Source of the DNA: Heptranchias perlo
Taxonomy: Eukaryota
Assembly: GCF_035084215.1 (NCBI RefSeq)
Contig: NC_090366.1
Span: forward strand, 13,888,001-13,952,000
Length of the DNA stretch: 64,000 nucleotides
Direction: 5' to 3'
Made by a program: the position numbers and the translations under genes. The notes under the pieces are model-generated. The model was given only the letters and a program-made list of their open reading frames with translations, was not told the DNA's origin and made no database searches. Below, piece after piece: positions 26,974 through 50,719 of this stretch; position 1 is the stretch's first letter, and each line of letters starts with the position of its first letter.

Positions 26974-27192
26974 TCACTCCTGTTTAATCTCGGCGTACTG
27001 GGTGCTGTCTCTAGTCCCGACGATCCCCTCGGTCAAACGGACCTTGGAGAAGTCGATGCAGGCGTAGTGAAGTTCCAGCTCCTCCTGCTCCTCCACCTGT
27101 CCAGCCTCCCCGTTCTCCACCTGCTTGAGGCTCCCCGCCTCTCCGCCCTCCTCGTCTCCACTGCCATCGGCCAACTCTCCGTTCTCCTCCGG
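26974..27192 (-). CDS. Siglec last exon with ITIM (LHYACI) and ITSM-like motif (TQYAEI)
   Basis: ctttgcAG acceptor; acidic linker, then ELHYACIDF..DSTQYAEIKQE*, resembling CD33 ELHYASLNF..TEYSEV. Confidence 0.92.
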   Translation of the reverse strand, partial: PEENGELADGSGDEEGGEAGSLKQVENGEAGQVEEQEELELHYACIDFSKVRLTEGIVGTRDSTQYAEIKQE

Positions 27193-30100
27193 CTGCAAAG
27201 GGAACAAAGAGGGTCTCTCGCTCAACCGTTTATTTACTGTTCAGGCTCCTCCGAGTGTCGTGGGAACAGGAGGAGGCCCATTCAGCCTCCTCGGGCCTGT
27301 TACCATAGGAACAGTAGGACATTCAGCCCCTCGAGCCTGTTACTATAGGAACAGGAGGAGGCCCATTCAGCCCCCTTGAGCCTGTTACTATAGGAACAGG
27401 AGGACGCCCATTCAGCCCCCTTGAGCCTGTTACCATAGGAACAGTAGGACATTCAGCCCCTCGAGCCTGTTACCATAGGAACAGGAGGAAGCCATTCAGC
27501 CCCTCGAGCCTGTTCCGCCATTCAATTAAATCATGGCTGATCTGTACCTTAACTCCATTTACCCGCCTTAGCTCTATATCCCATGATCCCCTTACCCAAC
27601 AAAAATCTATCAATCCCAGTCTTGCCCCCAGCCTCCACAGCTTTTTGGGGGAGAGAGTTCCAGATTTCCACTCCCCTTTGTGTGAAGAAGTGCTTCCCGA
27701 CATCACCCCTGAACGGCCTATGCTACATTGAGTTACATCGAAACTACAGCACAGAAACAGGCCATTCAGCCCAACAGGTCTATCCCGGTGTTTATGCTCC
27801 ACACGAGCCTCCTCCCTCCCTACTCCATCTCACCCTATCACCATATCCTTCTATTCCTTTCTCCCTCATGTGTTTATCCAGCTTCCCCTTAAATCCATCT
27901 ACACTATTCACCTCAACTACTCCTTGTGGGAGCGAGTTCCACATTCTCACCACTCTCTGGGTAAAGAAGTTTCTCCTGAATTCACTATTGGATTTATTAG
28001 TGACAAGTGGAAACATTTTCTCTACGTCTACCCTATCATTATCTTAAAGACCTCTATCAGGTCACCCCTCAGCTTTCTCTTTTCTGCAGAAAAGAGTCCC
28101 AGCCTGTTCAGTCTTTCCTGATAGTTATAACCTCTCAGTTCTGGTATCAACCTTGTAAATCTTTTTTGCACCGTCTCCAGTGCCTCTATATCCATTTTAT
28201 AATATGGAGACCAGAACTGTGCACAGTGCTCCAAGTGTGGTCTAACCAAGGTACATGGAGACCAGAACTGTGCACAGTGCTCCAAGTGTGGTCTAACCAA
28301 GGTATATGGAGACCAGAACTGTGCACAGTGCTCCAAGTGTGGTCTAACCAAGGTACATGGAGACCAGAACTGTGCACAGTGCTCCAAGTGTGGTCTAACC
28401 AAGGTATATGGAGACCAGAACTGTGCACAGTGCTCCAAGTGTGGTCTAACCAAGGTATATGGAGACCAGAACTGTGCACAGTGCTCCAAGTGTGGTCTAA
28501 CCAAGGTATATGGAGACCAGAACTGTACACAGTGCTCCAAGTGTGGTCTAACCAAGGTATATGGAGACCAGAACTGTGCACAGTGCTCCAAGTGTGGTCT
28601 AACCAAGGTACATGGAGACCAGAACTGTGCACAGTGCTCCAAATGTGGTCTAACCAAGGTATATGGAGACCAAAACTGTGCACAGTGCTCCAAGTGTGGT
28701 CTAACCAAGGTATATGGAGACCAGAACTGTACACAGTGCTCCAAGTGTGGTCTAACCAAGGTATATGGAGACCAGAACTGTGCACAGTGCTCCAAGTGTG
28801 GTCTAACCAAGGTACATGGAGACCAGAACTGTGCACAGTGCTCCAAGTGTGGTCTAACCAAGGTATATGGAGACCAGAACTGTGCACAGTGCTCCAAGTG
28901 TGGTCTAACCAAGGTACATGGAGACCAGAACTGTGCACAGTGCTCCAAATGTGGTCTAACCAAGGTATATGGAGACCAGAACTGTGCACAGTGCCCCAAG
29001 TGTGGTCTAACCAAAGTATATGGAGACCAGAACTGTGCACAGTGCTCCAAGTGTGGTCTAACCAAGGTACATGGAGACCAGAACTGTGCACAGTGCTCCA
29101 AGTGTGGCCTAACCAAGGTATATGGAGACCAGAACTGTGCACAGTGCTCCAAGTGTGGTCTAACCAAGGTATATGGAGACCAGAACTGTGCACAGTGCTC
29201 CAAGTGCGGCCTAACCAAGGTATATGGAGACCAGAACTGTGCACAGTGCCCCAAGTGTGGTCTAACCAAAGTATATGGAGACCAGAACTGTGCCCAGTGC
29301 TCCAAGTGTGGTCTAACCAAGGTACATGGAGACCAGAACTGTGCACAGTGCTCCAAGTGTGGCCTAACCAAGGTATATGGAGACCAGAACTGTGCACAGT
29401 GCTCCAAGTGTGGTCTAACCAAGGTATATGGAGACCAGAACTGTACACAGTGCTCCAAGTGTGGTCTAACCAAGGTATATGGAGACCAGAACTGTGCACA
29501 GTGCTCCAAGTGCGGCCTAACCAAGGTATATGGAGACCAGAACTGTGCACTGTGCTCCAAGTGTGGTCTAACCAATGTTCTATATAATTTTAACATAACT
29601 TCTCAGCTTTTTAATTCTGTCCCTCTAGAAATGACCCCCCAGTCCTTGGTTTGCTTTTTTTTATGGCCTTATTAACCTGCGTCATAGAGAAGAGAGCCCC
29701 AGCCTGTTCGACCTTTCTTGATAAGGATATCCTCTCAGTTTTGGTAGCATCTAATTTGAAGGTTATGCCCACGCGCCCCTCCCCTTGTTCTGGACTACCC
29801 CACCCACCCCAAAGTAGAGGCAATAGTTTCTCTCTCTCTCTCGACTCTACACGAGCGAGAATTGGCACCTTCCAGAGGAGAAAGAGGGAAATGTTGTAAC
29901 CGACAAATAAATGAAGGGGTCCGTACCATGCTGGCCGTCAGTACTGGAGAGGGCTCAGCTGTCAGGACTTGCATCTCTGTGGAATTGTTTGCTGCCGATT
30001 TCACCTTTCTGAAATGAAGAAGACAAGAAAGGAAAGTTTATACTCTGGTTATTTCAGAGCCGTGCAGCTTTCGTTCCCTGGCCGGCCAGTGTAAACACTT

Positions 30101-33100
30101 CCAGGAATCACGTCCTCTCTCAGTCACCATCTCCATCTTCCATTTCCCCGTTCCTTTTGACCGTGCTGCATGAATTCCGGAAAGGCAAACTCGCACGGCC
30201 AGCGTGAGAGAGAGAGAGAGAGAGAGAGAAGAGAGTGGGAGAGAAGGTAATAGAGAGACAGAACGAACGAGAGAGGGTTCAGGCTCTGCCGAAGGGGAGG
30301 AGGGAAGAGAGGGAGAGAGGGAAGGAAGGTGAGAAGGTAACAGAGAGAGATCGAGCGAGTGGGCGAAAAGGGAGAAAATAAGAGAGGATGAATGAGAGAG
30401 TGAAAAAGGGGGAGAGAGCGAGAGAGATAATGCATGAGAGTGAGAAAGGAGAGGAAGCAAGAGAGGGAATGAACGAGTGAGTGAGAAAGGAGAGGAAGCG
30501 AGAGAGAGAACGATTGAGAGAATGAGAAAGGAGAGAAAGCAAGAGAGAGAACGAATGAATGAATGAGAAAGGAGGGTGAGCAAGAGAGAGAACGAATGAA
30601 TGAGTGAGAAAGGAGAGGAAGCAAGAGAGAGAATTAACGCAAGAGACTGAGAAAGGAGAGAAAGCAAGTGAGAGAACGAATGAAAGAGAGAGAATCATAG
30701 AATCATAGAAAGTTATGGCCCATCATGTCTGTGCCGGCTGGAAAAGAGCTTAATCGCTATAATAATTAAAGAGAGAAAGGAGAGAAAGGAAGAGAGAGAA
30801 TGAATGAAAGTGAACGAAATAGAGGGAAAAGAGAGAGAAAGAATGAGAAGGAAAATGACTGAAAAAAAGGATAAAAAGGGAGAAGGAGAAGTGGACAGGA
30901 TGGGTGGACAGAGGAGGAAACAACAGCTAGTTTGCAGAACAAGATCAAACCGACTCTGAGTTAATATTTGGGGAAAGTTGGCCAGAGTATTGGGAGAACA
31001 CTCTGCCCTTTAAATGGTGCCATGGGAACAGACGGTTGAGATATCTTTCAGCCCGTCTGCCCCTCTCAGGTGGGACGTAAAAGATCCCACGGCCACTAAT
31101 TGGAAGAAGAGCAGAGGGAGTTCTCCCCGGTGTCCTGGGGCCGATATTTATCTCTCAACATTGCTGCCTGTGGGATCTTGCTGTGCGCAAATTGGCTGCC
31201 GCGTTTCCTGCATTACAACAGTGACCACACTTCGAAAAAAAAAGTACTTCACTGGCCGTAAAGCGCTTTGGGACGTCCTGAGGTTGTGAAAGGCGCGGTA
31301 GAAATGCGAGTTCTTTTCGTTCTTATCAGAATGTTCACTTACCTCTTGCAACACACGATAATCTGACAGAATATTAAGGATAAGATGAGCATTCCAGCAG
31401 CACCAACCACCACTGGGATCAGCATCTCCGATAGATAGGGGCCTCTCCCTGGGAAGACAAATCAGGAGTTATTGCATCAGGTGAGAGGCAGCGCAGGATG
31501 AATGTGGAAGATCCTCCAAATCATCGCAAATGCCATGGCCGCGGTGTCGGCCGTGACTCAGTGGTTAGCACATTCTCTCTCTCGCCTCTGAGTCGGAAGG
31601 TCGTGGGTTCGAGCCCCCACTCCAGAGACTCGAGCCCCATAATTGCAGGTCGACACTCCCCCAGTGCCCAGTACTGAGGGAGCGCCGCACTGTCGGAGGG
31701 TCAGTACTGAGGGAGCGCCGCACTGTCGGAGGGTCAGTACTGAGGGAGCGCCGCACTGTCGGAGGGTCAGTACTGAGAGAGCGCCGCACTGTCGGAGGTT
31801 CAGTACCAAGGGAGCGCTGCACTGTCAGAGCGTCAGTACCGAGGGAGCGCTGCACTGTCGGAGGGTCAGTACTGAGGGAGCGCTGCACTGTCGGAGGGTC
31901 AGTACTGAGGGAGCGCTGCACTGTCGGAGGGTCATTACCGAGGGAGCGCTGCACTGTCGGAGGGTCAGTACCGAGGGAGCGCCGCACTGTCAGAGGGTCA
32001 GTACTGAGGGAGCGCCGCACTGTCGGAGGGTCAGTACTGAGGGAGCGCCGCACTGTCGGAGGGTCAGTACTGAGGGAGCGCCGCACTGTCGGAGGGTCAG
32101 TACCGAGGGAGCGCTGCACTGTCGGAGGGTCAGTACTGAGGGAGCGCTGCACTGTCGGAGGGTCAGTACTGAGGGAGCGCTGCACTGTCGGAGGGTCATT
32201 ACCGAGGGAGCGCTGCACTGTCGGAGGGTCAGTACCGAGGGAGCGCTGCACTGTCGGAGGGTCAGTACTGAGGGAGCGCCGCACTGTCGGAGGGTCAGTA
32301 CAGAGGGAGCGCCGCACTGTCGGAGGGTCAGTACTGAGGGAGCGCCGCACTGTCGGAGGGTCAGTACTGAGAGAGCGCCGCACTGTCGGAGGTTCAGTAC
32401 CAAGGGAGCGCTGCACTGTCAGAGCGTCAGTACCGAGGGAGCGCTGCACTGTCGGAGGGTCAGTACTGAGGGAGCGCTGCACTGTCGGAGGGTCAGTACT
32501 GAGGGAGCGCTGCACTGTCGGAGGGTCATTACCGAGGGAGCGCTGCACTGTCGGAGGGTCAGTACCGAGGGAGCGCTGCACTGTCAGAGCGTCAGTACCG
32601 AGGGAGCACTGCACTGTCGGAGGGTCAGTACTGAGGGAGCGCCGCACTGTCGGAGGGTCAGTACTGAGGGAGTGCCGCACTGTCGGAGGGTCAGTACTGA
32701 GGGAGCGCCGCACTGTCGGAGGGTCAGTACTGAGGGAGTGCCGCACTGTCGGAGGGTCAGTACTGAGGGAGCGCTGCACTGTCGGAGGGTCATTACCGAG
32801 GGAGCGCTGCACTGTCGGAGGGTCAGTACCGAGGGAGCGCTGCACTGTCAGAGCGTCAGTACCGAGGAAGCACTGCACTGTCGGAGGGTCAGTACTGAGG
32901 GAGCGCCGCACTGTCGGAGGGTCAGTACTGAGGGAGTGCCGCACTGTCGGAGGGTCAGTACTGAGGGAGCGCTGCACTGTTGCAGGTGCCATCTTTCGGA
33001 CAAGACGTTAAACCGAGGTCCCCCTCTGCCCTCTCAGGTGGGACGAAGAGCAGGGGGGAGTTCTCCCCGGTGTCCTGGGGCCGATATTTATCCCTCAACC

Positions 33101-36100
33101 AACATCACTAAAAAAACAGATGATCTGGTCATTTATCACATTGCTGTTTGTGGGATCTTGCTGTGCGTAAATTGGCTGTCGTGTTTCCTACATTACAACA
33201 GTGAGCACACTTCAAAAAAATACTTAATTGGCTGTAAAGCGCTTTGGGACGTCCTGAGGTGGTGAAAGACGCTGTAGAAATGGGAGTCTCTCTTTTTGTA
33301 CCAGATATTTAGAAACAAGGGTGATTCCAGAAGGTTCTCTCACCTTTGACCCACAGATACACCTTGAACCTCGCCTCTCCGTGTTCGTTTCTAACCGAGC
33401 AGATGGCCTTCACCTCCTTCTCATCCTCTCGTCCCCTCAGGGTCAGTGTGCCCGTCACCAGATGCCCGTTGCTGACCCGCGACGTCGCCAGATGGCCGTG
33501 CGTCTGGTTGCCGGTGAAGTTGCCGCGGGGGAGGTGCCACGTGAGGTTACCCGGAGGGTTGGATCTGGCCGCGCAGACGCAGGTAATGCCCTGGTCCCTC
33601 CAAGCGCACTCCGACACATCGGAAATCTCCGGCTTATCTAAGGGCGTAAAACAGAATGTTGGGACAGAATTGCAAAAAAAAAACTGCTGTAGAGGTTGGA
33701 AGACCGAAACGAAAAAACCAGAGAGCGCGGGAGAGGTGACCGGGTGCAAGGGTCAAGAGTTCAAAGGTTCAACCCTCTCCTCAGAACTCACCACATTGAT
33801 CAAACACTCCCAGGGCAGGTACAGGGTTAGATACAGAGTAAAGCTCCCTCTACACTGTCCCATCAAACACTCCCAGGGCAGGTACACGGGGTTAGATACA
33901 GAGTAAAGCTCCCTCCACACTGTCCCATCAAACACTCCCAGGGCAGGTACACGGTTAGATACAGAGTAAAGCTCCCTCTACACTGTCCCATCAAACACTC
34001 CCAGGGCAGGTACAGGGTCAGATACAGAGTAAAGCTCCCTCTACACTGTCCCATCAAACACTCCCAGGGCAGGTACAGGGTCAGATACAGAGTAAAGCTC
34101 CCTCTACACTGTCCCGTCAAACACTCCCAGGGCAGGTACAGCACGGGTTAGATACAGAGTAAAGCTCCCTAACTAAAACTATGGGACAGTGTAGAGGGAG
34201 CTTTACTCTGTATCTAACCCTGTACCTGCCCTGGGAGTGTTTGATGGGACAGTGTAGAGGGAGCGTCACTCTGTATCTAACCCTGTACCTGCCCTGGGAG
34301 TGTTTGATGGGACAGTGTAGAGGGAGCTTTACTCTGTATCTAACCCTGTACCTGCCCTGGGAGTGTTTGATGGGACAGTGTAGAGGGAGCGTCACTCTGT
34401 ATCTAACCCTGTACCTGCCCTGGGAGTGTTTGACGGGACAGTGTAGAGGGAGCTTTACTCTGTATCTAACCCTGTACCTGCCCTGGGAGTGTTTGATGGG
34501 ACAGTGTAGAGGGAGCGTCACTCTGTATCTAACACCTCCGACAGTGCAGCCCTCCCTCCGTACTGGCACTGGGAGCATCAGGCTAGATTATGTGCTCAGG
34601 TCTCTGGACTTGAATCCATGACCATCTGCCTCAGAAGTGAGAGAGAGAGAGAGAGCACTGCCCACTGAGCCAAGGCTGACTCTCTGAAACAATAGTGGAA
34701 GAGAAGGCAAAGAGCATGAGGACACTGGGGGATTCGATGAAGCCAATCTTGGGTTTAGAAAGTCCACAGATTGTAGGAGGACGGGAAGTCTGAGGGAGGG
34801 GAAGAATTCCACTGGTTTTGAGGGGCTGGTAAAGAATATGTTGGAGTGGGAGACAGCGTGGTATGTCTCGGTCATGCAGGCAGGAGGAAGGGGATGTGGG
34901 ACGAGCGATTTGGAGCTTGGGAGGGACGTTGATAAGAGCTGAGTAATTATGAGGTAAAAAAATGACAGTCGTGGAGTAACAGGAAAGGTTCTAGGTTGGA
35001 GGGGAGCGAGGGATGATCTGTGAGACCAGAAACTTTTCCTTGTATCCTTCAACAAGAAGAGTTCAGAGAACCTTCCCCAGGAGCAGGATTCAAATCCTGG
35101 GCCAGAGTTGGGAGTCAGGTGTGGTCGAGGGGAAAAGAGTGTTTGACACAAGAGGCGAGACCGAGCTTCTTGGAGTCAACGTCCAGCACGGAGAAGATGT
35201 GGGAGGTTCACGGGAGACGGTGAGGACCTGCCCTCAACTGTATCTCAGTGAATTCCAATCTGTTCAGCCACGAAACGTAAAACACTTACACTCCACACTG
35301 ACGAAGAACGGGATGGAGTTGCTGGAGCCCATTGTGTTTCCCGCCGTGCAGTAGAACCAAGCATCGAGCTCCCGCGTTACAAGACCCAGATTGACGGACG
35401 CTGTCCTTGCGTTTAACTCAGTCCTATTGCTCCCGTCGATCCTGAACCAGCTGTAGTTAGTGGCCGGCGGGTTACTCTTGCTGAAACAGGATAATGTTAC
35501 GTTGTCCCCCTCTTTTATTCCATGCTCGGCCCCGACGACCCTCACCGCTGTTTCCTTGGGAGGATCTGAAAGAGAGGAGGCGGAGGAGCCAGCCAAAAAC
35601 ATTAAGACGTTAATAAACTTACAGGATGGGCAAGCAAATTTCAATATAGACAAGTGTGAGGTGGTGCATTTTGGTAGGAAGAAAAAGGAGGCCACATACT
35701 GCTTGGATAATAAGAGTCTAACTGGGGTAGGAGAACAGAGGGATCTGGGGGTACAGATACACAAATCACTGAAAGTAGCGACGCAGGTTAATAAGGCCAA
35801 AAAATAGCAAAACAAGCACTGGGGTTCATTTCCAGAGGATAGAATTGAAAAGCAGAGAAGTTATGTTAAACTTGTATAGAACCTTGATTAGGTCTCACTA
35901 GGAGTACTGTGCACAGTTCTGGTCTCCATATACCTTGGTTGGACCACACTTGGAGCACTGTGCACAGTTCTGGTCTCCGTATACCTTGGTTAGACCACAC
36001 TTGGAGCACTGTGCACAGTTCTGGTCTCCATATACCTTGGTTAGACCACACTTGGAGCACAGTGCACAGTTCTGGTCTCCATATACCTTGGTTAGACCAC

Positions 36101-39100: not shown

Positions 39101-42100
39101 ACCCTGTACCTGCCCTGGGAGTGTTTGATGGGACAGTGTAGAGGGAGCTTTACTCTGTATCTAACCCTGTACCTGTACTGGGAGTGTTTGATGGGACAGT
39201 GTAGAGGGAGCTTTACTCTGTATCTAACCCTGTACCTGCCCTGGGAGTGTTTGATGGGACAGTGTAGAGGGAGCTTTACTCTGTATCTAACCCTGTACCT
39301 GCCCTGGGAGTGTTTGATGGGACAGTGTAGAGGGAGCTTTACTCTGTATCTAACTCGTGCTGTACCTGCCCTGGGAGTGTTTGATGGGACAGTGTAGAGG
39401 GAGCGTTACTCTGTATCTAACCCTGTACCTGCCCTGGGAGTGTTTGATGGGACAGTGTGGAGGGAGCTTTACTCTGTATCTAACCCTGTACCTGCCCTGG
39501 GAGTGTTTGATGGGACAGTGTAGAGGGAGCTTTACTCTGTATCTAACCCTGTACCTGCCCTGGGAGTGTTTGATGGGACAGTGTGGAGGGAGCTTTACTC
39601 TGTATCTAACCCTGTACCTGCCCTGGGAGTGTTTGATGGGACAGTGTAGAGGGAGCTTTACTCTGTATCTAACCCTGTACCTGCCCTGGGAGCGTTTGAT
39701 TGTTAAAAGTGTTTCTGGTCCCCAGAACCGACATCCCCTTATTGATGAACATGAATCTTTGCCAGGACAAAAACGATATTCCACGACATCAAGAATTTAA
39801 AATCTCTCAGGTGCACGCCGATTGTTTGTGAAGGTGCAATCTCTTGTTCAATCAAAGAAGAGAGTTCTGTTGAAGAAACACAATCTGCTGCCGTGTGTAT
39901 CTCAGGGTAACTGTTGGGTACTTACAGTTAACGGTGATATTGATGCCTCGTTTAGCTTTCCCGTAGTCATTCCACGCCCGACAGTGATAAAGACCCTGCT
40001 CTCTCCGCGTGATGTTATCAAACTGAAGTACCAGCGTTTTGTTGAGGACAGAAGCCAAGATGTTTTGATTACTTGTCGACCACGTTATGTTGGACAATGG
40101 ATTACTCGTTACGCTGCAGTTGACCTGGACCGAATGTCCCTCCGTAACCAAAATGGGCGACATCTTCGCAATCTTTGGGCCGTCTAGTCATAGAATTACA
40201 TAGAATTACATCGGGTCCACAGCACAGAAACAGGCCATTCGGCCCAACTGGTCTATCCCGGTGTTTATGCTCCACACGAGTCTCCTCCCTCCCTACTTCA
40301 TCTCACCCTATCACCATATCCTTCTATTCCTTTCTCCCTCATGTGTTTATCCAGCTTCCCCTTAAATCCATCTACACTATTCACCTCAACCACTCCTTGT
40401 GGGAGCGAGTTCCACATTCTCACCGCTCTCTGGGTAAAGAAGTTTCTCCTGATTTTGGATTTATTATTCCAGAGGAAACAGAAGGCTGAGGGGTGACCTG
40501 ATAGAAGTCTCCATATCCTTTTTATAATATGGAGACCAGAACTGTGCACAGTGCTCCAAGTGTGGTCTAACCAAGGTATATGGAGACCAGAACTGTGAAC
40601 AATGCTCCAAGTGTGGTCTAACCAAGGTATATGGAGACCAGAACTGTGCACAGTGCTCCAAGTGTGGTCTAACCAAGGTATATGGAGACCAGAACTGTGC
40701 ACAGTGCTCCAAGTGTGGTCGAACCAAGGTATATGGAGACCAGAACTGTGAACAATGCTCCAAGTGTGGTCTAACCAAGGTATATGGAGACCAGAACTGT
40801 GCACAGTGCTCCAAGTGTGGTCTAACCAAGGTATATGGAGACCAAAACTGTGCACAGTGCTCCAAGTGTGGTCTAACCAAGGTATATGGAGACCAGAACT
40901 GTGCACGGTGCTCCAAGTGTGGTCTAACCAAGGTATATGGAGACCAGAACTGTGCACAGTGCTCCAAGTGTGGTCTAACTAAGGTATATGGAGACCAGAA
41001 CTGTGCACAGTGCTCCAAGTGTGGTCTAACTAAGGTATATGGAGACCAGAACTGTGCACGGTGCTCCAAGTGTGGTCTAACCAAGGTATATGGAGAGCAG
41101 AACTGTACACAGTGCTCCAAGTGTGGTCTAACTAAGGTATATGGAAACCAGAACTGTGCACAGTGCTCCAAGTGTGGTCTAACTAAGGTATATGGAGACC
41201 AGAACTGTACACAGTGCTCCAAGTGTGGTCTAACTAAGGTATATGGAGACCAGAACTGTGCCCAGTGCTCCAAGTGTGGTCTAACCAAGGTTCTGTACAA
41301 GTTTAACATAGGAACATAGGAACAGGAGTAGGCCATTCAGCCCCTCTTGCCTGCTCCGCCATTTGATAAGATCATGGCTGATCTGTGATCTAACTCCATA
41401 TACCTGCCTTTGGCCCATATCCCTTAATACCTTTGGTTGCCAAAAAGCTATCTATCTCAGATTTAAATTTAGCAATTGAGCTAGTATCAATTGCCATTTG
41501 CGGAAGACAGTTCCAAACTTCTACCACCCTTTGTGTGTAGAAATGTTTTCTAATCTCACTCCTGAAAGGTCTGGCTCTAATTTTTAGACTGTGCCCCCTA
41601 CTCCTAAAATCCCCAACCAGCGGAAATAGTTTCTCTCTATCCACCCTATCTGTTCCCCTTAATATCTTATAAACTTCGATCAGATCACCCCTTAACCTTC
41701 GAAACTCTAGAGAATACAACCCCAATTTGTGTAATCTCTCCTCGTAACTTAACCCTTGAAGTCCGGGTATCATTCTAGTAAACCTACGCTGCACTCCCTC
41801 CAAGGCCAATATGTCCTTCCGAAGGTGCGGTGCCCAGAACTGCTCACAGTACTCCAGGTGCGGTCTAACCAGGGTTTTGTATAGCTGCAGCATAACTTCT
41901 GCCCCCTTGTACTCCAGTCCTCTGGATATAAAGGCTAGCATTCCATTTGCCTTCTTGATTATTTTCTGCACCTGTTCATGACACTTCAATGATCTATGTA
42001 CCTGTATCCCTAAGTCCCTTTGGACATCCACTGTTTTTAACTTTTTACCATTTAGAAAGTACCCTGTTCTATCCTTTTTTGATCCAAAGTGGATGACCTC

Positions 42101-45100: not shown

Positions 45101-48100
45101 GGGACGTTGGCTGAAAGGTATGATTCTGTGAGTATGGCTATGTCAGGCTGTTGCTTGACTAGCCTGTGGGACAGCTCTCCCAATTTTGGCACAAGTCCCC
45201 AGATGTTAGTGAGGAGGACTTTGCAGGGTCGACTGGGCTTGGTTTGCCTTTTTCATGTCCGATGCCGGGTGGTCCGTCCGGTTTTATTCTTATTATGACT
45301 TTTCGTAGCAGGATTGTACAACTGAGTGGCTTGCTCGGCCATTTCAGAGGGCAGTTTCGAATCAACCACATTGCTGTGGGTCTGGAGTCACGAATAGGCC
45401 CAGACCGGGAAAGGAGGGCAGGTTTCCTTCCCTAAAGGATATTGTGTGAGTTAGGGGAGTTCCAGAGGAGCTGAAGTTTACATGGGGCGGACGATAAGAG
45501 GCCGGCCGGGGAGCGTTGGGATAGTCGAGTCTGGAGGTGACGGTCGAGGGAATCTCACAGCATCTGACGGGGTGAGTCCACACTCACATTTAACATCGAG
45601 AAGAAGAGTTTGCTGAGACTCGGCGTTGGTGACAGAGTATTGGGCCTTGCATCCCAGTTGTTTACCCATGTCTCTGTGTGAGGGAACGAAGGTCAGAGAG
45701 GTGGAAAATACTGACGTCAAATTGCTCCTTTTGGTCAAGGTGACGGTGGCGGAATTGGTTAGAATGGTCTCATTAATCCAGGTCAGGTTCGGTCCCATCC
45801 CACTGCAATTATCCACAAACGTGCAAGTTAGTGTCGTCGTTTTATTGCTGACGATTTGCGGAGAGTATGATATGTTGGGTTTCTCTTCGAGATCTGTAGC
45901 GGGGGGGGAAGAAAGCAGATTTAGGTACATGGAAACAGGAGGAGGCTATTCAGCCCCTCGAGACTGTTCCGCCGTTCAATTAGATCATGCTGACCTGTAT
46001 CTTAACTCCATTTGCCCACCTTGGCTCCATATCCCTCGATACCCTCACCCAACAAAATGGTCATTAAATAACATGTTTACTATTTCACTACATCCCGTGC
46101 TGTACCTGCCCTGGGAGTGTTTGATGGGGACAGTGTAGAGGGAGCTTTACTCTGTATCTAACCCTGTACCTGCCCTGGGAGTGTTTGATGGGACAGTGTA
46201 GAGGGAGCTTTACTCTGTATCTAACCCTGTACCTGCCCTGGGAGTGTTTGATGGGACAGTGTAGAGGGAGCTTTACTCTGTATCTAACCCTGTACCTGCC
46301 CTGGGAGTGTTTGATGGGACAGTGTAGAGGGAGCTTTACTCTGTATCTAACCCTGTACCTTCCCTGGGAGTGTTTGATGGGACAGTGTAGAGGGAGCTTT
46401 ACTCTGTATCTAACCCTATATCTGCCCTGGGAGTGTTTGATGGGACAGTGTACAGGGAGCTTTACTCTGTATCTAACCCTGTACCTGCCCTGGGAGTGTT
46501 TGATGGGACAGTGTAGAGGGAGCTTTACTCTGTATCTAACCCTGTACCTGCCCTGGGAGTGTTTGATGGGACAGTGTAGAGGGAGCTTTACTCTGTATCT
46601 AACCCTGTACCTGCCCTGGGAGTGTTTGACGGGACAGTGTAGAGGGAGCTTTACTCTGTATCTAACCCTGTACCTGCCCTGGGAGTGTTTGATGGGACAG
46701 TGTAGAGGGAGCTTTACTCTGTATCTAACCCTGTACCTGCCCTGGGAGTGTTTGACGGGACAGTGTAGAGGGAGCTTTACTCTGTATCTAACCCTGTACC
46801 TGCCCTGGGAGTGTTTGACGGGACAGTGTAGAGGGAGCTTTACTCTGTATCTAACCCGTGCCCTGGGAGAGTTTGTTGCTGACTCCGATAGGCAGACTGT
46901 TCCAATCCCAGCACTGACATCCCTCACCTTGCTGAGTGTAAAACTCGTTGTAATAAAACGTACCTGAAATTTTTAAATCAAGATACGTGTTTCCGTCAGT
47001 GTAATTCTCCTTATCGAGCTCAATCCTGAAATGATATGTTCCATTGTCTGCACTCCTGATACTGTTTATCATCAGGGAACAACTCATCTCGGTCAGATTG
47101 CCCACCAGCTGACTGCGAGACTTGTAATCCTGGTCTACGTTGCTTCGGATTGTGTGATAAACTGTGGTCTGTGAGGGACGTTCGTAATCCTTGTACCAGA
47201 CGGCCACAAGCTGTGTAGGACCCAGAGCATTTGGGTAACTGTAGTTACAGGGGATTGTCACACACAAGCCTTTCTGTGCTGTCAGAACCCTGGGCATCTG
47301 CACAGTCCAGTTCGAATCTGTTGAAAGCACACCTGCGAAATGAAGGAAGCACATTCCACATCACTGAGAGAGAGGCTCAATACTTTTCAGTTTAAGTATC
47401 TCTCCACCGGGACTCCCCCACCCTGCCTCATCGGAGTGGCAGCGAATTTTGGCAGCTGTTCGACTGTGTGATGCCTCGCGCCCAAAACCAGTTCTGGACC
47501 TCATTCGCCATTCCACCCCCTCCACCCCCTCATGCACTTTCCAGTAAGGGATCTGATCAGCGGCCCCTGGTGAGTGCTGCTTCTCCTAACTCAGCGGTGA
47601 GTTCCCCAACACTTCTGGCCAGTGACATTTCCCAGTGCCCAGTACTGAGGGAGCGCCGCACTGTCGGAGGGTCAGTACTGAGGGAGTGCCGCACTGTCGG
47701 AGGGTCAGTACTGAGGGAGCGCTGCTCTGTCGGAGGGTCATTACTGAGGGAGTGCTGCACTGTCGGATGGTCAGTACTGAGGGAGCGCCGCACTGTCGGA
47801 GGGTCAGTACTGAGGGAGCGCCGCACTGTCGGAGGGTCATTACTGAGGGAGTGCTGCACTGTCGGAGGGTCAGTACTGAGGGAGCGCTGCACTGTCGGAG
47901 GGTCAGTACTGAGGGAGCGCTGCACTGTCGGAGGGTCAGTACTGAGGGAGCGCCGCACTGTCGGAGGGTCAGTACTGAGGGAGCGCTGCACTGTCGGAGG
48001 GTCATTACTGAGGGAGTGCTGCACTGTCGGAGGGTCAGTACTGAGGGAGCGCTGCACTGTCGGAGGGTCAGTTCTGAGGGAGCGCTGCACTGTCGGAGGG

Positions 48101-49747
48101 TCAGTACTGAGGGAGCGCCGCACTGTCGGAGGGTCAGTACTGAGGGAGCGCTGCACTGTGGGAGGGTCAGTACTGAGGGAGCGTCGCACTGTCGGAGGTG
48201 CCATCTTTCGGATGAGACGTTAAACCGAGGCCCCATCTGCCCTCTCAGGTGGGTGTAAAAGATCCCACCGCCCACTATTTTGAAGAAGAGCAGGGGGAGT
48301 TCTCCCCGGTGTCCTGGGGACGATATTTATCCCTCAACCAACATCACTAAAAGAGAATATCTGGTCATTATCACATTGCTCTGGAGTTCACTCCCTAAAC
48401 CTCTCCACCTCTCTCTCCTCCTTAAAAACTGGTTTTCAAATCCCTCCATTGCCCCTCGCCCCCCTCCCTATCTCTGTAACCTCCTCCAGCCCCTACAACC
48501 CTCCGAGATCTCTGCACTCCTCCAATTCTGGCCTCTTGTCCATCCCCCGATTCCCATCGCTCCACCATTGGCGGCCGTGCCTTCAGCTGCCTGGGCCCTA
48601 AGCTCTGGAATTCCCTCCCTAAACCTCTCCGCCTCTCTCTCCTCCTTAAAATCTACCTCTTTGACCAAGCTTTTGGTCACCTGTCCTAATATCTCCTTAT
48701 GTGGCTCGGTGTCAAATATTGTCACTGTGAAGCTCGTTGTTGTTGCTGTTTGTGGGATCTTGCTGTGCGCAAATTGGCTGCCCCGTTCCCCGCATTACAA
48801 CAGTGACCACACTTCAAAAAAATTACTTCATTGGCTGTGAAGCGCTTTGGGACGTCCTGAGGTGGTGAAAGACACGATAGAAATGGGAGTTCTTTCTTCC
48901 TATTTCTTTTCAATGTCACTACATGGATCGCAGCCTTTCAAGATGGCCCNNNNNNNNNNNNNNNNNNNNNNNNNNNNNNNNNNNNNNNNNNNNNNNNNNN
49001 NNNNNNNNNNNNNNNNNNNNNNNNNNNNNNNNNNNNNNNNNNNNNNNNNNNNNNNNNNNNNNNNNNNNNNNNNNNNNNNNNNNNNNNNNNNNNNNNNNNN
49101 NNNNNNNNNNNNNNNNNNNNNNNNNNNNNNNNNNNNNNNNNNNNNNNNNNNNNNNNNNNNNNNNNNNNNNNNNNNNNNNNNNNNNNNNNNNNNNNNNNNN
49201 NNNNNNNNNNNNNNNNNNNNNNNNNNNNNNNNNNNNNNNNNNNNNNNNNNNNNNNNNNNNNNNNNNNNNNNNNNNNNNNNNNNNNNNNNNNNNNNNNNNN
49301 NNNNNNNNNNNNNNNNNNNNNNNNNNNNNNNNNNNNNNNNNNNNNNNNNNNNNNNNNNNNNNNNNNNNNNNNNNNNNNNNNNNNNNNNNNNNNNNNNNNN
49401 NNNNNNNNNNNNNNNNNNNNNNNNNNNNNNNNNNNNNNNNNNNNNNNNNNNNNNNNNNNNNNNNNNNNNNNNNNNNNNNNNNNNNNNNNNNNNNNNNNNN
49501 NNNNNNNNNNNNNNNNNNNNNNNNNNNNNNNNNNNNNNNNNNNNNNNNNNNNNNNNNNNNNNNNNNNNNNNNNNNNNNNNNNNNNNNNNNNNNNNNNNNN
49601 NNNNNNNNNNNNNNNAGCCCCACTATGATTTTAATTCAGACCCCCCACCCCCCATTATCCCTTTCTCTCTCTCCGGTTAATGACGCCCTTTTTCGTACCT
49701 TGGAGAAAAGCCACAAAGGACAACACAGCCGTCCCTGGGCCACACAT
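26974..49747 (-). CDS. Siglec-family inhibitory receptor, 7 Ig domains (V + 6 C2), ~833 aa, MAG/CD33-related-like: complement(join(26974..27192,29927..30008,31343..31448,33344..33637,35290..35565,37032..37316,38138..38395,39926..40183,45588..45893,46964..47332,49699..49747))
   Basis: 11 exons, all AG/GT, with phase-1 Ig exons; total 2502 nt, open frame ending in TGA. V-set has LCVTIPC, CSLMI and DNGTYHFRIE; tail has LHYACIDF and TQYAEIK. Confidence 0.9.
27262..27513. repeat. ~40-45-bp tandem repeat (6 units) of a CR1 3' terminus
   Basis: ATAGGAACAGGAGGAGGCCATTCAGCCCCTCGAGCCTGTTACC, contiguous with CR1 27513-27720. Confidence 0.85.
27722..29685 (-). mobile_element. CR1 3' fragment with 51-bp array (~27 units, 28203-29575)
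   Basis: Same unit and same 3' UTR as the other three copies. Confidence 0.9.
29927..30008 (-). CDS. Siglec cytoplasmic exon 1 (KVKSAANNSTEMQVLTAEPSPVLTASM)
   Basis: Long pyrimidine tract + cAG (phase 2), ATG|GTACGG donor (phase 0). Confidence 0.85.
30205..30920. repeat. Purine-rich low-complexity tract
   Basis: GA-rich degenerate repeats. Confidence 0.9.
31343..31448 (-). CDS. Siglec transmembrane exon (GRGPYLSEMLIPVVVGAAGMLILSLIFCQIIVCCKR)
   Basis: tcttcccAG acceptor, hydrophobic run with no charged residue, AG|GTAAGT donor. Confidence 0.9.
31552..33295 (+). mobile_element. Full-length Deu-SINE with 33-bp array (~40 units)
   Basis: Head, array 31669-32985, Deu core, tail. Confidence 0.85.
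33344..33637 (-). CDS. Siglec Ig domain 7 exon (MAG D5-type)
   Basis: SECAWRDQGITCVCAARSNP..TLTLRG..AICSVRNEHG; 294 nt. Confidence 0.92.
33800..34532. repeat. 63-bp minisatellite, two oppositely oriented arrays (~6 + ~5.5 units)
   Basis: Unit CCCTGTACCTGCCCTGGGAGTGTTTGATGGGACAGTGTAGAGGGAGCTTTACTCTGTATCTAA; orientation flips at 34170-34181. Confidence 0.95.
35290..35565 (-). CDS. Siglec Ig domain 6 exon
   Basis: YPPKET..KEGDNVTLSCFSKSNPPATNYSWF..FYCTAGNTMG; 276 nt. Confidence 0.92.
35625..36950 (+). mobile_element. CR1 3' fragment with 51-bp array (~8 units) and tandemly repeated 3' end
   Basis: FNIDKCEVVHFG..RDLGVQIH, array 35880-36288, 3' repeats 36765-36950. Confidence 0.88.
37032..37316 (-). 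CDS. Siglec Ig domain 5 exon
   Basis: YSPRNLSI..EEGMSVCLRCSVDSVPASNLTW..DGKHQCVAENEHG; 285 nt. Confidence 0.92.
37415..38115 (-). mobile_element. CR1 3' fragment
   Basis: VRPQLEYCVQLWAPH..RRLRGDLIE. Confidence 0.85.
38138..38395 (-). CDS. Siglec Ig domain 4 exon
   Basis: YGP..CLVDSWPPSSITW..DSGLYTCSALNSYG; 258 nt, phase 1/1. Confidence 0.92.
38520..39045 (-). mobile_element. Deu-SINE 3' part with ~6 units, fused to a 63-bp array
   Basis: Deu core + tail; array runs directly into the 63-bp repeat. Confidence 0.8.
39043..39700. repeat. 63-bp minisatellite (~10 units)
   Basis: Same unit. Confidence 0.95.
39926..40183 (-). CDS. Siglec Ig domain 3 exon
   Basis: YGP..EGHSVQVNCSVTSNP..ITW..GLYHCRAWNDYG; 258 nt; GTAAGT donor; acceptor abuts a CR1 tail. 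Confidence 0.88.
40188..41305 (-). mobile_element. CR1 3' fragment with 51-bp array (~15 units)
   Basis: Array 40528-41290; tail ATGTAATTCTATGTAATTCTATG ends beside the exon acceptor. Confidence 0.88.
41306..42480 (-). mobile_element. Young 5'-truncated CR1 LINE, RT C-terminal half uninterrupted
   Basis: QKAFDKVPH..SGVPQGSVLGP..SKFADDTK..to stop; TTCCTATG tail. Confidence 0.93.
43045..45440 (-). mobile_element. Rearranged CR1-group (Zenon-like) LINE: 5' end + APE endonuclease, inverted second endonuclease copy, RT C-terminus + 3' UTR
   Basis: PDIAILTES, RGGGTVIY, TTYRPP, VGDFNVH (APE) on both strands; YKAQVRNVMEYSPLAW at the 3' end. Confidence 0.85.
45588..45893 (-). CDS. Siglec Ig domain 2 exon
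   Basis: LEEKPNI..LTCTFVDNCSG..PNLTW..STSLTFVPSHRDMGKQLGC; includes the Cys expected for the D1-D2 bond; 306 nt. Confidence 0.93.
46095..46868. repeat. 63-bp minisatellite (~12 units)
   Basis: Same unit. Confidence 0.95.
46964..47332 (-). CDS. Siglec V-set sialic-acid-binding domain exon
   Basis: NWTVQMP, GLCVTIPCNYSYP, VWYK, LVGNLTEMSCSLMI, DNGTYHFRIE; 369 nt, phase 1/1. Confidence 0.95.
47630..48900 (+). mobile_element. Deu-SINE with 33-bp array (~17 units) and nested L2 fragment (48380-48720)
   Basis: SINE core interrupted after CACATTGCT and resuming at TTGCTGTTTGTGGG. Confidence 0.8.
48950..49615. other. Assembly gap in the Siglec leader-V intron (others: 56287-56461, 56886-57497, 58004-58448)
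   Basis: Runs of N. Confidence 1.
49699..49747 (-). CDS. Siglec leader exon (MCGPGTAVLSFVAFLQG); exon begins at 49784 with 5' UTR
   Basis: Strong acceptor ttttcttttccAG, hydrophobic signal peptide, CAAG|GTACGA phase-1 donor joining G-VLS-TD of the V exon. Confidence 0.8.
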
Positions 49748-50470
49748 GTTCAGAGATGGGTTTCACCCTAAATCATTCACGAACCTGGAAAAGAAAATCA
49801 CAGCTTAGACATCAGAGGACACGACAGGCAACGCCTCCCCCACCCACACACTGGCCGCTCTTCATCGCTGAACCCTGACTGTCGACAAGATATTCAACCA
49901 CGGGGGGGCCACCTTTCGGATGAGACGCTAAACCGAGGCTCCCGTCTGCCCTCTCGGGTGGGACGTAAAAGATCCCACGGCCGCTATTTCGAAGAGGAGC
50001 AAGAGGGAGTTCTCCCCCGGTGTCCTGGGGCCGATATTTATCCCTCAATCAACATCACTGAAAAAAAAAAAACAGATTTTCCGGTCATTAACACATCGCT
50101 GTTTGTGGGATCTTGCTGTGCGCAAATTGGCTGCCGCGTTTCCCCCATTCCGACTCCCCCTGCTCTTCTTCGAAACAGTGGCCGTGGGATCTTTCACGCC
50201 CACCCGAAAAGGCAGACGGGAGCCTCGGTTTAACGTCTCATCCGAAAGTCAGCGCCTCCGACAGTGCAGTGCTGGCACTGGGGGAGCGTCGGCCTGGGTT
50301 TATGGGAGCTCCGGTCTCTGGAGTTGGGAGGCTCGAACCCACGACCTTCTGACCCAGAGGGGGGGAAGAGAGAGAGAGAGAGAGAGCGCTACTCACTGAG
50401 ACACGGCCCGACACACCAAAGCGGGAGAGGTCTAGACGTGGTTGAGACGGAGAAAGGATGATGCCCAACA

Positions 50471-50488
50471 GAAATGAGAAGTGAAAGG
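50471..50488. promoter_or_regulatory. Candidate PU.1/IRF composite-like or PRDM1-type motif GAAATGAGAAGTGAAAGG
   Basis: Motif match only, ~700 bp upstream of the Siglec leader exon in non-TE sequence. Confidence 0.3.
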
Positions 50489-50719
50489 GTTTTAACAGTG
50501 CGTACTGGAAAAAGTGAATTTCTCCACACAACAAGGCAAAGGCCCTCACATCCCTTCTGATCGCATTACACAATCCTATTTTACTTATAATGAGAGTTAC
50601 ACCATCATTCTTACACAATGCCCAGTCACACTGAATCTAGCACAGTCTGAACATTTGATTAACCCTTTTAAGAGATACTATTTTGAGGGGGGTGCGAGAG
50701 CAGAGAGACGCTAGTGGGG

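What the first reader, a model, noticed from the sequence alone, without database searches (positions are those of the whole stretch)
26974..49747. Complete 7-Ig inhibitory Siglec with a mosaic CD22 / MAG / CD33-related architecture
Seen: intact 11-exon ~833-aa ORF with leader, V-set (YHFRIE Arg; B-E and D1-D2 cysteines), six C2 domains, uncharged TM, and LHYACI + TQYAEI tail. Known: seven Ig domains is the CD22 count; MAG has five, with a distinctive last domain (SHC-x8-CLC..SNP..ILTLRG..VIC.ARN); a proximal ITIM plus distal TEYSEI-like pair defines CD33-related Siglecs. Here D7 (SEC-x8-CVC..SNP..TLTLRG..AICSVRN) is MAG-D5-like, D6 (EGDNVTLSC..SNPP..YSWF) is CD22-like, and the tail is CD33r-like. 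Inference: a lineage-specific or ancestral-type Siglec that fits no mammalian subfamily and may link MAG to the inhibitory CD33r Siglecs in early jawed vertebrates.
Basis: partly seen in the sequence, partly recalled or inferred. Interest (0 to 1): 0.85.

Follow-up and report, generated by a model that had tools for sequence, protein, structure and literature searches.

The report
Shark seven-domain inhibitory Siglec gene
This is an intact sevengill-shark gene for a seven-domain sialic-acid receptor with an inhibitory-type tail; it is already in the public gene models, has counterparts in other sharks and rays, and is a member of a shark and ray receptor family, not a patchwork of three mammalian ones.

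Summary
An 11-exon, 833-codon gene lies on the minus strand at 26974-49747. All 10 introns are GT-AG, and the seven Ig exons are all phase 1-1. The assembly gap lies inside intron 1, not in coding sequence.

The gene is already annotated. All 11 exon peptides are exact, ordered substrings of the NCBI protein 'Schwann cell myelin protein-like [Heptranchias perlo]'. Scyliorhinus, Pristiophorus and Mobula models show the same seven-domain order, so the gene is not species-specific.

The 'CD22/MAG/CD33r mosaic' reading is only partly supported:
- The last domain's type also ends mammalian CD33-related Siglecs.
- The two-tyrosine tail, at the same spacing, also occurs in non-mammalian MAG.
- D6 belongs to a generic domain class, and its CD22 likeness is weak.

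V+D2 trees place the gene in an elasmobranch Siglec clade (97/91). That clade is sister to tetrapod CD33-related Siglecs (96/85), with MAG outside. A MAG-sister placement is not quite rejected (AU p=0.053).

No RNA evidence was obtained. Other notes of this scan report many Siglec clusters elsewhere in the same genome.

The parts
49699..49747 (-). Exon 1: ATG and signal peptide (MCGPGTAVLSFVAFLQ plus one base), with donor CCAAG|GTACGA, phase 1
   Evidence: Read directly. The peptide is found at residues 1-16 of P0002. Leader length matches 4 of 5 orthologue models.
47333..49698 (-). Intron 1, which contains the assembly gap. No coding sequence appears to be missing.
   Evidence: N run listed. 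Phase-1 donor and phase-1 acceptor on either side. Orthologue N-termini.
46964..47332 (-). Exon 2: V-set domain with the YHFRIE arginine and three cysteines
   Evidence: Pfam V-set 7.8e-12 and Ig_CD22 2.8e-10. Solved structures: sialoadhesin 1.2e-18, MAG 1.5e-14, Siglec-5 1.9e-14, CD22 5.6e-6.
45588..45893 (-). Exon 3: D2, a C2-set domain with the extra DNC cysteine
   Evidence: Pfam C2-set_2 3.6e-6. Solved structures: MAG 1.2e-8, CD22 1.1e-6.
39926..40183 (-). Exon 4: D3, I-set type. Its acceptor is preceded by (ATGTAATTCT)x2 instead of a clear pyrimidine tract.
   Evidence: MAG is the best Siglec among solved structures at 1.4e-18.
38138..38395 (-). Exon 5: D4, I-set type, a sister copy of D3
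   Evidence: D3 against D4 gives E about 5e-11. MAG 8.3e-20. D3 and D4 group together in the domain tree.
37032..37316 (-). Exon 6: D5, the domain type that is repeated many times in the expanded elasmobranch family
   Evidence: MAG 4.4e-18.
35290..35565 (-). Exon 7: D6, 92-95% identical in protein to two tandem domains of the public H. perlo 5-Ig model P0067
33344..33637 (-). Exon 8: D7, a membrane-proximal domain of the MAG-D5 / CD33r-last-domain type
31343..31448 (-). Exon 9: stalk and uncharged transmembrane segment, ending in phase 2
   Evidence: Hydropathy scan, DNA read, residue check.
29927..30008 (-). Exon 10: 82 nt, the juxtamembrane part of the tail ((R)KVKSAANNSTEMQVLTAEPSPVLTASM)
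   Evidence: It has the best pyrimidine tract (18 of 20) among the 6 phase-compatible candidates. Splice sites read. The peptide is in P0002.
26974..27192 (-). Exon 11: acidic tail with LHYACI (ITIM) and TQYAEI (ITIM-like / ITSM-like), then the stop

Best explanation
The locus is an intact gene of Heptranchias perlo for a type I membrane Siglec. It is already predicted by NCBI as 'Schwann cell myelin protein-like'. It is the sevengill member of a seven-Ig orthologue group shared by sharks and rays. That group belongs to a large elasmobranch Siglec family whose nearest relatives outside cartilaginous fishes are the tetrapod CD33-related Siglecs and, one step further out, MAG.

Inferred mechanism, not shown. 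The N-terminal V-set domain binds sialylated glycans through the arginine of YHFRIE. Six further Ig domains hold it far from the membrane. After tyrosine phosphorylation, LHYACI and TQYAEI in the tail recruit SH2 phosphatases (SHP-1/2) and damp signalling in the cell that carries the receptor.

The apparent 'mosaic' is the shared modular plan of the MAG/CD33r branch: V, then C2, then I-set domains, then a D7-type domain, then a two-tyrosine tail. On top of that plan comes exon exchange among clustered elasmobranch paralogues.
For: - Gene model: 11 exons, 10 of 10 introns GT-AG, 833 codons.
- Public model: 11 of 11 exon peptides are exact, ordered substrings of P0002. P0002 is named 'Schwann cell myelin protein-like [Heptranchias perlo]'.
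- Siglec hallmarks: Pfam V-set and Ig_CD22. The arginine and the cysteines align to sialoadhesin and MAG.
- Orthologues: of the 60 proteins segmented, 3 besides the focal one show V-D2-D3-D4-D5-D6-D7, with each domain best matched by its positional counterpart. They are Scyliorhinus, Pristiophorus and Mobula, at 37-63% identity per domain.
- Trees on V+D2: the focal clade has support 100/99 to 100/100.
- In the 56-row careful tree the main elasmobranch clade has 97/91, that clade plus the CD33r group 96/85, and those plus MAG 96/95. The CD33r group holds 7 mammals, 3 amphibians and one long-branch Betta row (names).
- The 108-row FastTree gives a compatible picture. The focal clade (100), the tetrapod CD33r group, the 5-Ig clade and the expanded family form an unresolved 71-row group (91) with MAG outside.
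- Tail: 6 of 7 focal-clade rows keep LHYACI and TQYA[EQ]I at -32/-9.
Against: - P0002 is an automatic model and may rest on the same sequence signals that I used.
- The canonical arginine is kept in only 2 of 5 orthologue-group members: Heptranchias and Scyliorhinus. Pristiophorus has T, Mustelus I and Mobula Q. Sialic-acid binding is therefore not a conserved property of the group.
- Deep branching is weakly resolved. In the 49-row tree the elasmobranch + CD33r node has only 89/78.
- AU tests do not reject focal + MAG (p 0.136), elasmobranch + MAG (p 0.195 and 0.053) or focal + CD22 (p 0.077). The groups tested were named after the tree had been seen.
- LHYACI ends in I. The ITIM signature quoted in PMC7226832 ends in L/V; wider consensus forms that allow I are recalled by me.
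- No Siglec-1 or Siglec-15 rows were in the trees, and no chimaera sequence appeared among the named hits.
Confidence: 0.75

Rival explanations
1. It is the elasmobranch orthologue of MAG (Siglec-4), enlarged to seven Ig domains. It would act in glia-axon adhesion rather than as an immune inhibitory receptor.
For: - NCBI names it and its orthologues SMP-like or MAG-like.
- MAG is the best solved-structure Siglec for D2, D3, D4, D5 and D7.
- Its tail aligns in motif and spacing with non-mammalian MAG tails.
- None of the 120 listed hits (of 136) to gecko MAG is chondrichthyan. Of these, 118 are named and 2 unnamed ones fall among amniotes. No chondrichthyan row fell in the MAG clade of the 108-row tree. 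A separate shark MAG was therefore not seen.
- The AU tests do not reject a MAG-sister position.
Against: - Latimeria MAG V+D2 scores 288 bits against gecko MAG and 272 against paddlefish MAG, but only 102 against this protein. It reaches at most 110 against any elasmobranch protein held.
- The best trees put MAG outside elasmobranch + CD33r.
- MAG is split from all other rows at 100/100 in the D7-to-C-terminus tree.
- The essential arginine is lost in 3 of 5 orthologues. All three MAG rows in that alignment (rat, Latimeria, grass carp) keep it.
- Absence of a true shark MAG is not shown. The searches work by shared words or by the D7 domain, and 16 hits were not listed.
Confidence: 0.1
2. It is a true inter-subfamily chimera, built by exon shuffling from CD22, MAG and CD33r-type genes.
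For: - Exon exchange does happen in this cluster. D6 is 92% and 95% identical to domains 3 and 4 of P0067, while V, D2 and D7 are 42%, 38% and 33% identical.
- The V+D2 and D7-to-tail trees disagree on which elasmobranch subfamily is nearest.
- D6 falls in a domain class (support 95, quick tree) that also holds most CD22 C2 domains. CD22 d6-d7 is its best Siglec among solved structures.
Against: - Every exchange partner that I could identify is an elasmobranch paralogue.
- No focal domain nests inside a CD22 or MAG clade.
- The D6 class also holds domain 3 of tortoise Siglec-10, and of Candoia, gar and paddlefish Siglecs.
- The D7 type and the tail are shared by MAG and CD33r alike.
- The domain tree has 89 columns for 110 rows and is a quick search.
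Confidence: 0.07
3. It is a CD22 (Siglec-2) paralogue or orthologue, as its seven Ig domains and its position next to a CD22-like gene might suggest.
For: - It has seven Ig domains.
- Pfam Ig_CD22 matches the V-set.
- First-stage notes describe a CD22-like neighbour, tail to tail.
- AU does not reject focal + CD22 on one side of a branch (p 0.077).
Against: - CD22 proteins give the weakest scores for every focal domain, and none of the 7 CD22 or CD22-like rows has a D7-type domain.
- CD22 is the V-set's weakest Siglec match but one among solved structures, at 5.6e-6.
- Mammalian CD22 rows carry four tyrosine motifs, against two here.
- The neighbour's CD22 identity could not be verified: tblastn with CD22 tails found nothing.
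Confidence: 0.03
4. It is an unexpressed or decaying copy within a birth-and-death cluster. It is intact by sequence but not used.
For: - There is no transcript evidence.
- The D3 acceptor lacks a clear pyrimidine tract.
- The introns are packed with minisatellites and LINE fragments.
Against: - 833 codons are open across 11 exons with canonical splice sites.
- All domain cysteines, the arginine and both tail motifs are intact.
- Orthologues are kept in sharks and rays.
Confidence: 0.05

Closest known systems
NCBI gene models of the same orthologue group: MAG-like [Scyliorhinus canicula] 858 aa (P0155), SMP-like X2 [Pristiophorus japonicus] 819 aa (P0156), MAG-like X1 [Mobula hypostoma] 848 aa (P0160)
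   Same: They have the same seven domains in the same order. Scyliorhinus and Mobula carry the same LHYACI / TQYA[EQ]I tail; in Pristiophorus that tail is on isoform X4, not on X2. The clade has support 100/99-100.
   Different: Identity per domain is 37-63%. Pristiophorus, Mustelus and Mobula have lost the canonical arginine. Some isoforms drop domains: Mobula X2 lacks D6, and Pristiophorus X4 lacks D3/D4.
Tetrapod CD33-related Siglecs (for example wombat Siglec-10, cat Siglec-5)
   Same: The tail matches: ELHYASINF...TEYSEIK against ELHYACIDF...TQYAEIK. The last domain is of the D7 type. They are the sister group in V+D2 trees. Arginine loss among orthologues is a habit I recall for this subfamily.
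   Different: The rows used here have two to five Ig domains rather than seven. The sister relation has moderate support only. Synteny with the CD33r cluster was not tested.
MAG / Siglec-4 (mouse structure 5LF5; fish and coelacanth MAG with ITIM)
   Same: The order V, C2, I-set domains, D5-type domain is shared. MAG is the best solved-structure match for five of the seven domains. Non-mammalian MAG has a homologous two-tyrosine tail (PMC7226832 passages).
   Different: MAG has five domains. It is far more conserved: 272-288 bits among bony-vertebrate MAGs against 102 here. It forms a separate clade.
CD22 / Siglec-2
   Same: Both have seven Ig domains and an inhibitory tail. D6 falls in the same broad C2 class as CD22 domains.
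   Different: CD22 has no D7-type domain. Its V-set and D2 are distant. Mammalian CD22 rows have four tyrosine motifs.

Membership tests
Siglec family | N-terminal V-set Ig domain followed by C2-type Ig domains, a single membrane span and a cytoplasmic tail | tested here: met
   Pfam on each exon, hydropathy, exon model.
Siglec family | Conserved arginine on the F strand that binds the sialic-acid carboxylate | tested here: met
   YHFRIE aligns with sialoadhesin YNFRFE and MAG YYFRGD. The role of the residue is established knowledge, recalled.
Siglec family | Three cysteines in the V-set and an extra cysteine in D2 (intra-sheet and inter-domain disulfides) | tested here: met
   The cysteines of the V-set and of D2 align with those of MAG. 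Which cysteines pair is recalled, not tested.
Siglec family | Actual binding of sialylated glycans | not testable with these tools
   Needs an Fc-fusion glycan array with an Arg-to-Ala control.
MAG (Siglec-4) orthologue | Groups inside the MAG clade | tested here: not met
   The MAG clade (99/95 to 100/99) excludes it. A sister position is not rejected by AU.
MAG (Siglec-4) orthologue | Five Ig domains with strongly conserved V+D2 | tested here: not met
   It has seven domains. It scores 102 bits against Latimeria MAG V+D2, while gecko and paddlefish MAG score 288 and 272.
MAG (Siglec-4) orthologue | Last domain of the MAG D5 type | tested here: met
   (2e-11; the next solved-structure hit is at 2e-3). 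The domain is also present in CD33r Siglecs, so it is not exclusive.
MAG (Siglec-4) orthologue | Expression in myelinating glia | not testable with these tools
   No reads could be laid.
CD22 (Siglec-2) | V-set and D2 group with CD22; CD22-type tail with several ITIMs | tested here: not met
   Only the count of seven Ig domains agrees.
CD33-related Siglecs | Membrane-proximal ITIM plus distal ITIM-like motif | tested here: met
   LHYACI at -32 and TQYAEI at -9, as in wombat Siglec-10 with LHYASI and TEYSEI. The feature is not exclusive: non-mammalian MAG has it too.
CD33-related Siglecs | Common descent with tetrapod CD33r Siglecs to the exclusion of MAG, CD22 and others | tested here: inconclusive
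   The sister grouping has 89/78 with 49 rows and 96/85 with 56 rows. AU for the MAG-sister alternative gives p 0.195 and 0.053.
CD33-related Siglecs | Location in the CD33r gene cluster (conserved synteny) | not tested

The most novel reading that the evidence does not exclude
The elasmobranch Siglec family that includes this gene may be the cartilaginous-fish counterpart of the tetrapod CD33-related Siglecs. If so, inhibitory CD33r-type Siglecs already existed in the common ancestor of jawed vertebrates. They would have arisen beside MAG from a gene with a V, C2, I-set, D7-type plan and a two-tyrosine tail, and would later have been lost in teleosts. The published picture I read says that fish genomes lack CD33-related Siglecs. 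This conserved seven-Ig gene would then be the least derived, most MAG-like surviving member of that family.
Probability: 0.4. Interest if true: 0.55.

Novelty: new member of a known kind. Interest (0 to 1): 0.33.

Why it matters
The only fish-Siglec paper I could read (PMC7226832, passages) lists four Siglecs in fish and states that fish genomes lack CD33-related Siglecs. It does not mention sharks or cartilaginous fishes. Here a shark gene, its orthologues in sharks and rays, and dozens of automatically named paralogues form a clade. That clade sits next to the tetrapod CD33-related Siglecs and carries the same inhibitory tail module.

If this placement holds, it moves the origin of that immune-regulatory branch back to the base of jawed vertebrates. 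It would also make the link between MAG and CD33r testable in an accessible animal such as the catshark.

For this locus alone the result is modest. It is a correct and already annotated gene model, and the 'three-way mosaic' is explained by shared ancestry plus local exon exchange.

Tried and rejected
- RNA evidence. The look-up of sequencing runs listed 24 runs, none on record as RNA.
I could therefore not compare the D6 exon with the neighbour gene's exons at the DNA level, nor check synteny in Scyliorhinus.
- Neighbour identity. A local tblastn of CD22 and CD22-like tails and of three full shark Siglecs against window 1-26000 and 49800-64000 gave no hit at E 1e-3. The first-stage claim of a CD22-like neighbour therefore stays unverified by me.
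- True shark MAG. Searching with gecko MAG listed 120 of 136 hits, none chondrichthyan. Two unnamed hits turned out to be amniote-like. The Atlas look-up gave taxa only at phylum level and did not help. This does not show absence.
- Lungfish 826-aa 'MAG-like' protein (P0023). I considered it as an orthologue and rejected it. It groups with the reptile Siglec-10-like proteins (99/98), and its middle domains are repeats of the D7 type.
- Literature. Six of the seven searches found no paper on cartilaginous-fish Siglecs; the seventh gave the teleost paper PMC7226832. One search (siglec + sharks + ITIM + rays) returned 0 papers. The whale-shark genome paper holds the word 'siglec' once (listing only). 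PMC7916940 mentions MAG only for mice (passages). Subscription papers are not in the library and supplements were closed, so a description elsewhere cannot be excluded.
- Structure prediction was not run. The sequence matches to solved Siglec structures already answered the domain questions.

Full report
**1. What is in the sequence**

The gene lies on the minus strand. Seven open stretches with Ig-like translations have phase-1 acceptors and phase-1 donors at these boundaries:
- V 47332-46964
- D2 45893-45588
- D3 40183-39926
- D4 38395-38138
- D5 37316-37032
- D6 35565-35290
- D7 33637-33344

A hydropathy scan of the minus strand between D7 and the tail found several hydrophobic windows. Only the one at the transmembrane exon, 31448-31343 (DNA), is splice-compatible and appears in P0002. 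That exon ends in phase 2.

The last exon, 27192-26974, starts in phase 0. An exon of length 1 modulo 3 must therefore lie between them. Of six phase-compatible candidates, 30008-29927 (82 nt) has by far the best pyrimidine tract, 18 of 20. It also has canonical splice sites.

The leader exon, 49747-49699, starts with ATG and ends with a phase-1 donor. All 10 introns are GT-AG. The exon lengths sum to 2499 nt, or 833 codons.

**2. The assembly gap**

The N run at 48950-49615 lies inside intron 1. The donor before it and the acceptor after it have matching phases. Four of five orthologue models have a 16-residue leader before the first glycine of the V exon, as here; Mustelus has 17. I see no sign of a coding exon hidden in the gap. 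Contiguity across it rests on the scaffold only, and I did not try to fill it.

**3. The gene is already annotated**

The search of 1.84 billion representative proteins with the D7 exon alone gave 193 proteins at E up to 1e-3 and 11 at E up to 1e-30. It returned an 833-aa protein, P0002.

All 11 exon peptides are exact, ordered substrings of P0002. Its sources name it 'Schwann cell myelin protein-like [Heptranchias perlo]', on a 15.7-Mb contig. I cannot tell whether that model had transcript support.

**4. Siglec hallmarks**

- Pfam gives V-set (7.8e-12) and Ig_CD22 (2.8e-10) on exon 2, C2-set_2 on D2, and Ig_3/I-set on D3-D6. On D7, C2-set_2 falls just under its cut-off.
- Against solved structures the V-set matches sialoadhesin (1.2e-18), MAG (1.5e-14), Siglec-5, Siglec-8 and CD33. 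CD22 comes only at 5.6e-6.
- YHFRIE aligns with the arginine motif of sialoadhesin and MAG. The V-set and D2 cysteines align with those of MAG.
- The ectodomain has 30 N-glycosylation sequons, and the membrane span has no charged residue.

**5. Orthologues**

A search with P0002 gave 110 proteins at E up to 1e-10 among the 8000 candidates scored. Most of the named ones, and all of the top 71, are from sharks and rays. They carry a mix of automatic names: MAG-like, CD22-like, Siglec-10/12/13, sialoadhesin-like, hemicentin-like.

I segmented 60 labelled proteins with the seven focal domains as queries. Three besides the focal protein show the same seven domains in the same order:
- Scyliorhinus canicula, 858 aa
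- Pristiophorus japonicus, 819 aa
- Mobula hypostoma, 848 aa

Each of their domains is best matched by its positional counterpart, at 37-63% identity. Shorter isoforms or relatives drop D6 (Mobula X2) or D3/D4 (Pristiophorus X4, Mustelus). The gene is thus an orthologue group shared by sharks and rays, not a species-specific novelty.

**6. Are the 'mosaic' markers diagnostic?**

*D7.* Among solved structures it matches MAG domain 5 at 2e-11; the next hit is at 2e-3. The PDB holds no long CD33r ectodomain, however. In the wider data a D7-type last domain is present in:
- 9 of 9 MAG rows;
- 3 of 4 mammalian CD33r rows (cat Siglec-5, degu Siglec-11, wombat Siglec-10);
- both turtle rows;
- 19 of the 24 elasmobranch rows segmented.

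It is present in 0 of 7 CD22 or CD22-like rows. In the domain tree these form one class of 28 rows (support 97, quick tree).

*The tail.* LHYACI and TQYAEI lie 32 and 9 residues from the end. The same spacing is seen elsewhere:
- gecko MAG: IDYANI at -32
- Xenopus MAG: TDYANI and TEYAEI
- Latimeria MAG: ..YANLDFSK..TEYAEI
- axolotl 'MAG-like': LQYASI and TLYSEV
- wombat Siglec-10: LHYASI at -27 and TEYSEI at -8, the same pair a few residues closer
- mammalian CD22: a comparable last pair at -28 and -8

PMC7226832 (passages read) already states that fish and coelacanth MAG carry ITIMs and that this is probably ancestral.

*D6.* Its solved-structure hits are FCRL5 (6.8e-14), contactin-2 and CEA, then CD22 d6-d7 (2.1e-9), CD22 d3 (2e-7) and MAG d3 (2.6e-7). 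In the domain tree it sits in a 32-row class (support 95, quick). That class holds most CD22 C2 domains, but also domain 3 of tortoise Siglec-10 and of Candoia, gar and paddlefish Siglecs.

*D3, D4 and D5.* MAG is their best Siglec among solved structures, at 1.4e-18, 8.3e-20 and 4.4e-18.

So the domain classes are real, but they are shared across subfamilies. None of them ties a part of this gene to CD22, MAG or CD33r specifically.

**7. Phylogeny of V+D2**

*49 rows, 228 columns, careful search.* Eleven of the 60 proteins were left out because they are truncated, have several V-sets or duplicate an isoform.
- MAG: 99/95
- Focal clade of 6 rows: 100/99
- All 19 elasmobranch rows: 94/92
- Elasmobranch + mammal/amphibian CD33r: 89/78
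- Those plus MAG: 87/94

*56 rows.* The longest branches were removed and 12 rows were added.
- Main elasmobranch clade: 97/91
- That clade + CD33r: 96/85. The CD33r group holds 7 mammals, 3 amphibians and one long-branch Betta protein that UniRef calls CD22; names come.
- Those plus MAG: 96/95

*108 rows, FastTree.* This gave a compatible picture: the focal clade (100), the tetrapod CD33r group, the 5-Ig clade and the expanded family form an unresolved 71-row group (91) with MAG outside. No chondrichthyan row fell in the MAG clade.

*AU tests.* They are weak:
- focal + MAG, p 0.136
- elasmobranch + MAG, p 0.195 (49 rows) and 0.053 (56 rows)
- focal + CD22, p 0.077

The groups were named after the trees had been seen.

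*Other results.* A second, smaller elasmobranch clade (Stegostoma, Pristiophorus, Carcharodon) groups with lungfish and reptile Siglec-10-like proteins (87, quick tree). Latimeria MAG V+D2 scores 288 and 272 bits against gecko and paddlefish MAG. It scores only 102 against the focal protein and at most 110 against any elasmobranch protein held.

**8. Real mosaicism, but within the cluster**

In the tree of D7 to the C-terminus (41 rows, 235 columns) the focal group nests with the expanded elasmobranch family (17 rows, 100/100). The 5-Ig 'MAG-like' clade stands apart (100/100). In V+D2 it is the 5-Ig clade that joins the expanded family (99/97).

The focal D6 is 92% and 95% identical to domains 3 and 4 of P0067, 'MAG-like X2 [H. 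perlo]', which lies on the same contig. V, D2 and D7 of the two proteins are only 42%, 38% and 33% identical. In other sharks the corresponding 5-Ig protein has a D5-like domain and then a D6-like domain. This points to a recent exon conversion and duplication between neighbouring genes in Heptranchias. I could not study it at the DNA level.

**9. Function (inferred)**

With the arginine, the cysteines and the tail motifs intact, the most likely role is a sialic-acid-binding inhibitory receptor that signals through SHP-type phosphatases.

One caution: only 2 of 5 members of the orthologue group keep the arginine, Heptranchias and Scyliorhinus. Pristiophorus has T, Mustelus I and Mobula Q. This looks like the fast-evolving CD33r Siglecs (recalled) rather than like MAG.

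The cell type is unknown.

**10. Literature**

Seven searches found no paper in the library on Siglecs of cartilaginous fishes. PMC7226832 (passages) says that fish regularly have Siglec-1, CD22, MAG and Siglec-15 and lack CD33-related Siglecs. The words 'shark' and 'cartilaginous' occur 0 times in it. Supplements were closed and subscription papers are not held, so this is not proof that the family is undescribed.

**11. Earlier notes of this scan**

Twenty-four notes on this genome fit the word 'Siglec', several of them on the same contig. The family expansion has therefore been seen repeatedly in this scan.

**Verdict**

This is a new, uncharacterised but already auto-annotated member of a known kind. 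Interest is moderate to low for the locus itself and somewhat higher for the family-level question.

Noticed in passing
window 35290-35565 (D6 exon) against public protein P0067: D6 is 92% and 95% identical in protein to two tandem domains of the H. perlo 5-Ig Siglec P0067. The other shared domains are 33-42% identical. This indicates a recent exon conversion and duplication between clustered genes.
   Followed up: partly
V-set exon 46964-47332 and the orthologue proteins P0155, P0156, P0158, P0160: The sialic-acid-binding arginine is kept in Heptranchias and Scyliorhinus. It is replaced in Pristiophorus (T), Mustelus (I) and Mobula (Q), so 2 of 5 keep it.
   Followed up: partly
window 40184-40215, just upstream of the D3 exon on the minus strand: The D3 acceptor is preceded by a tandem ATGTAATTCT ATGTAATTCT and has only 13 of 20 pyrimidines. 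A first-stage note calls this a CR1 3' tail. The exon is still in the public model and in the orthologues.
   Followed up: partly
introns, e.g. 28007-29596, 31565-33265, 33753-34621, 35866-36499, 38814-39800, 40298-41336, 46088-46967, 47468-48275; also 4234-5388, 7147-8105, 9074-10083, 17088-18152, 19063-20958, 22012-22566: The same few minisatellite families recur all over the window. They read as long repetitive ORFs in several frames, for example ..LEHCAQFWSPYTLVRPH.. and ..PPTVRRSLSTD... They fill much of the introns.
   Followed up: no
window 41390-42550 (minus strand) and 43853-45192: There is a 386-aa ORF that looks like a LINE reverse transcriptase, and two inverted ORFs that look like endonuclease and N-terminal fragments. 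All lie in the 5.4-kb intron between D2 and D3. These names come from reading the translations, not from a family search.
   Followed up: no
window 5939-6274, plus strand: An ORF holds ..VYENM.. and ..IEYASINF... A first-stage note reads it as part of a CD22-like tail of the upstream, convergent gene. My tblastn with CD22 tails found nothing at E 1e-3, so its family is unverified.
   Followed up: partly
proteins P0178, P0180, P0205 (Stegostoma, Pristiophorus, Carcharodon): A second elasmobranch Siglec lineage groups with lungfish and reptile 'Siglec-10-like' proteins rather than with the main elasmobranch family. This suggests at least two ancient Siglec lineages besides MAG and CD22.
   Followed up: partly
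proteins P0009 (S. canicula) and P0011 (Pristis pectinata): Family members carry several V-set domains: three in tandem in P0009, and V-C2-C2-V-C2... in P0011.
   Followed up: no
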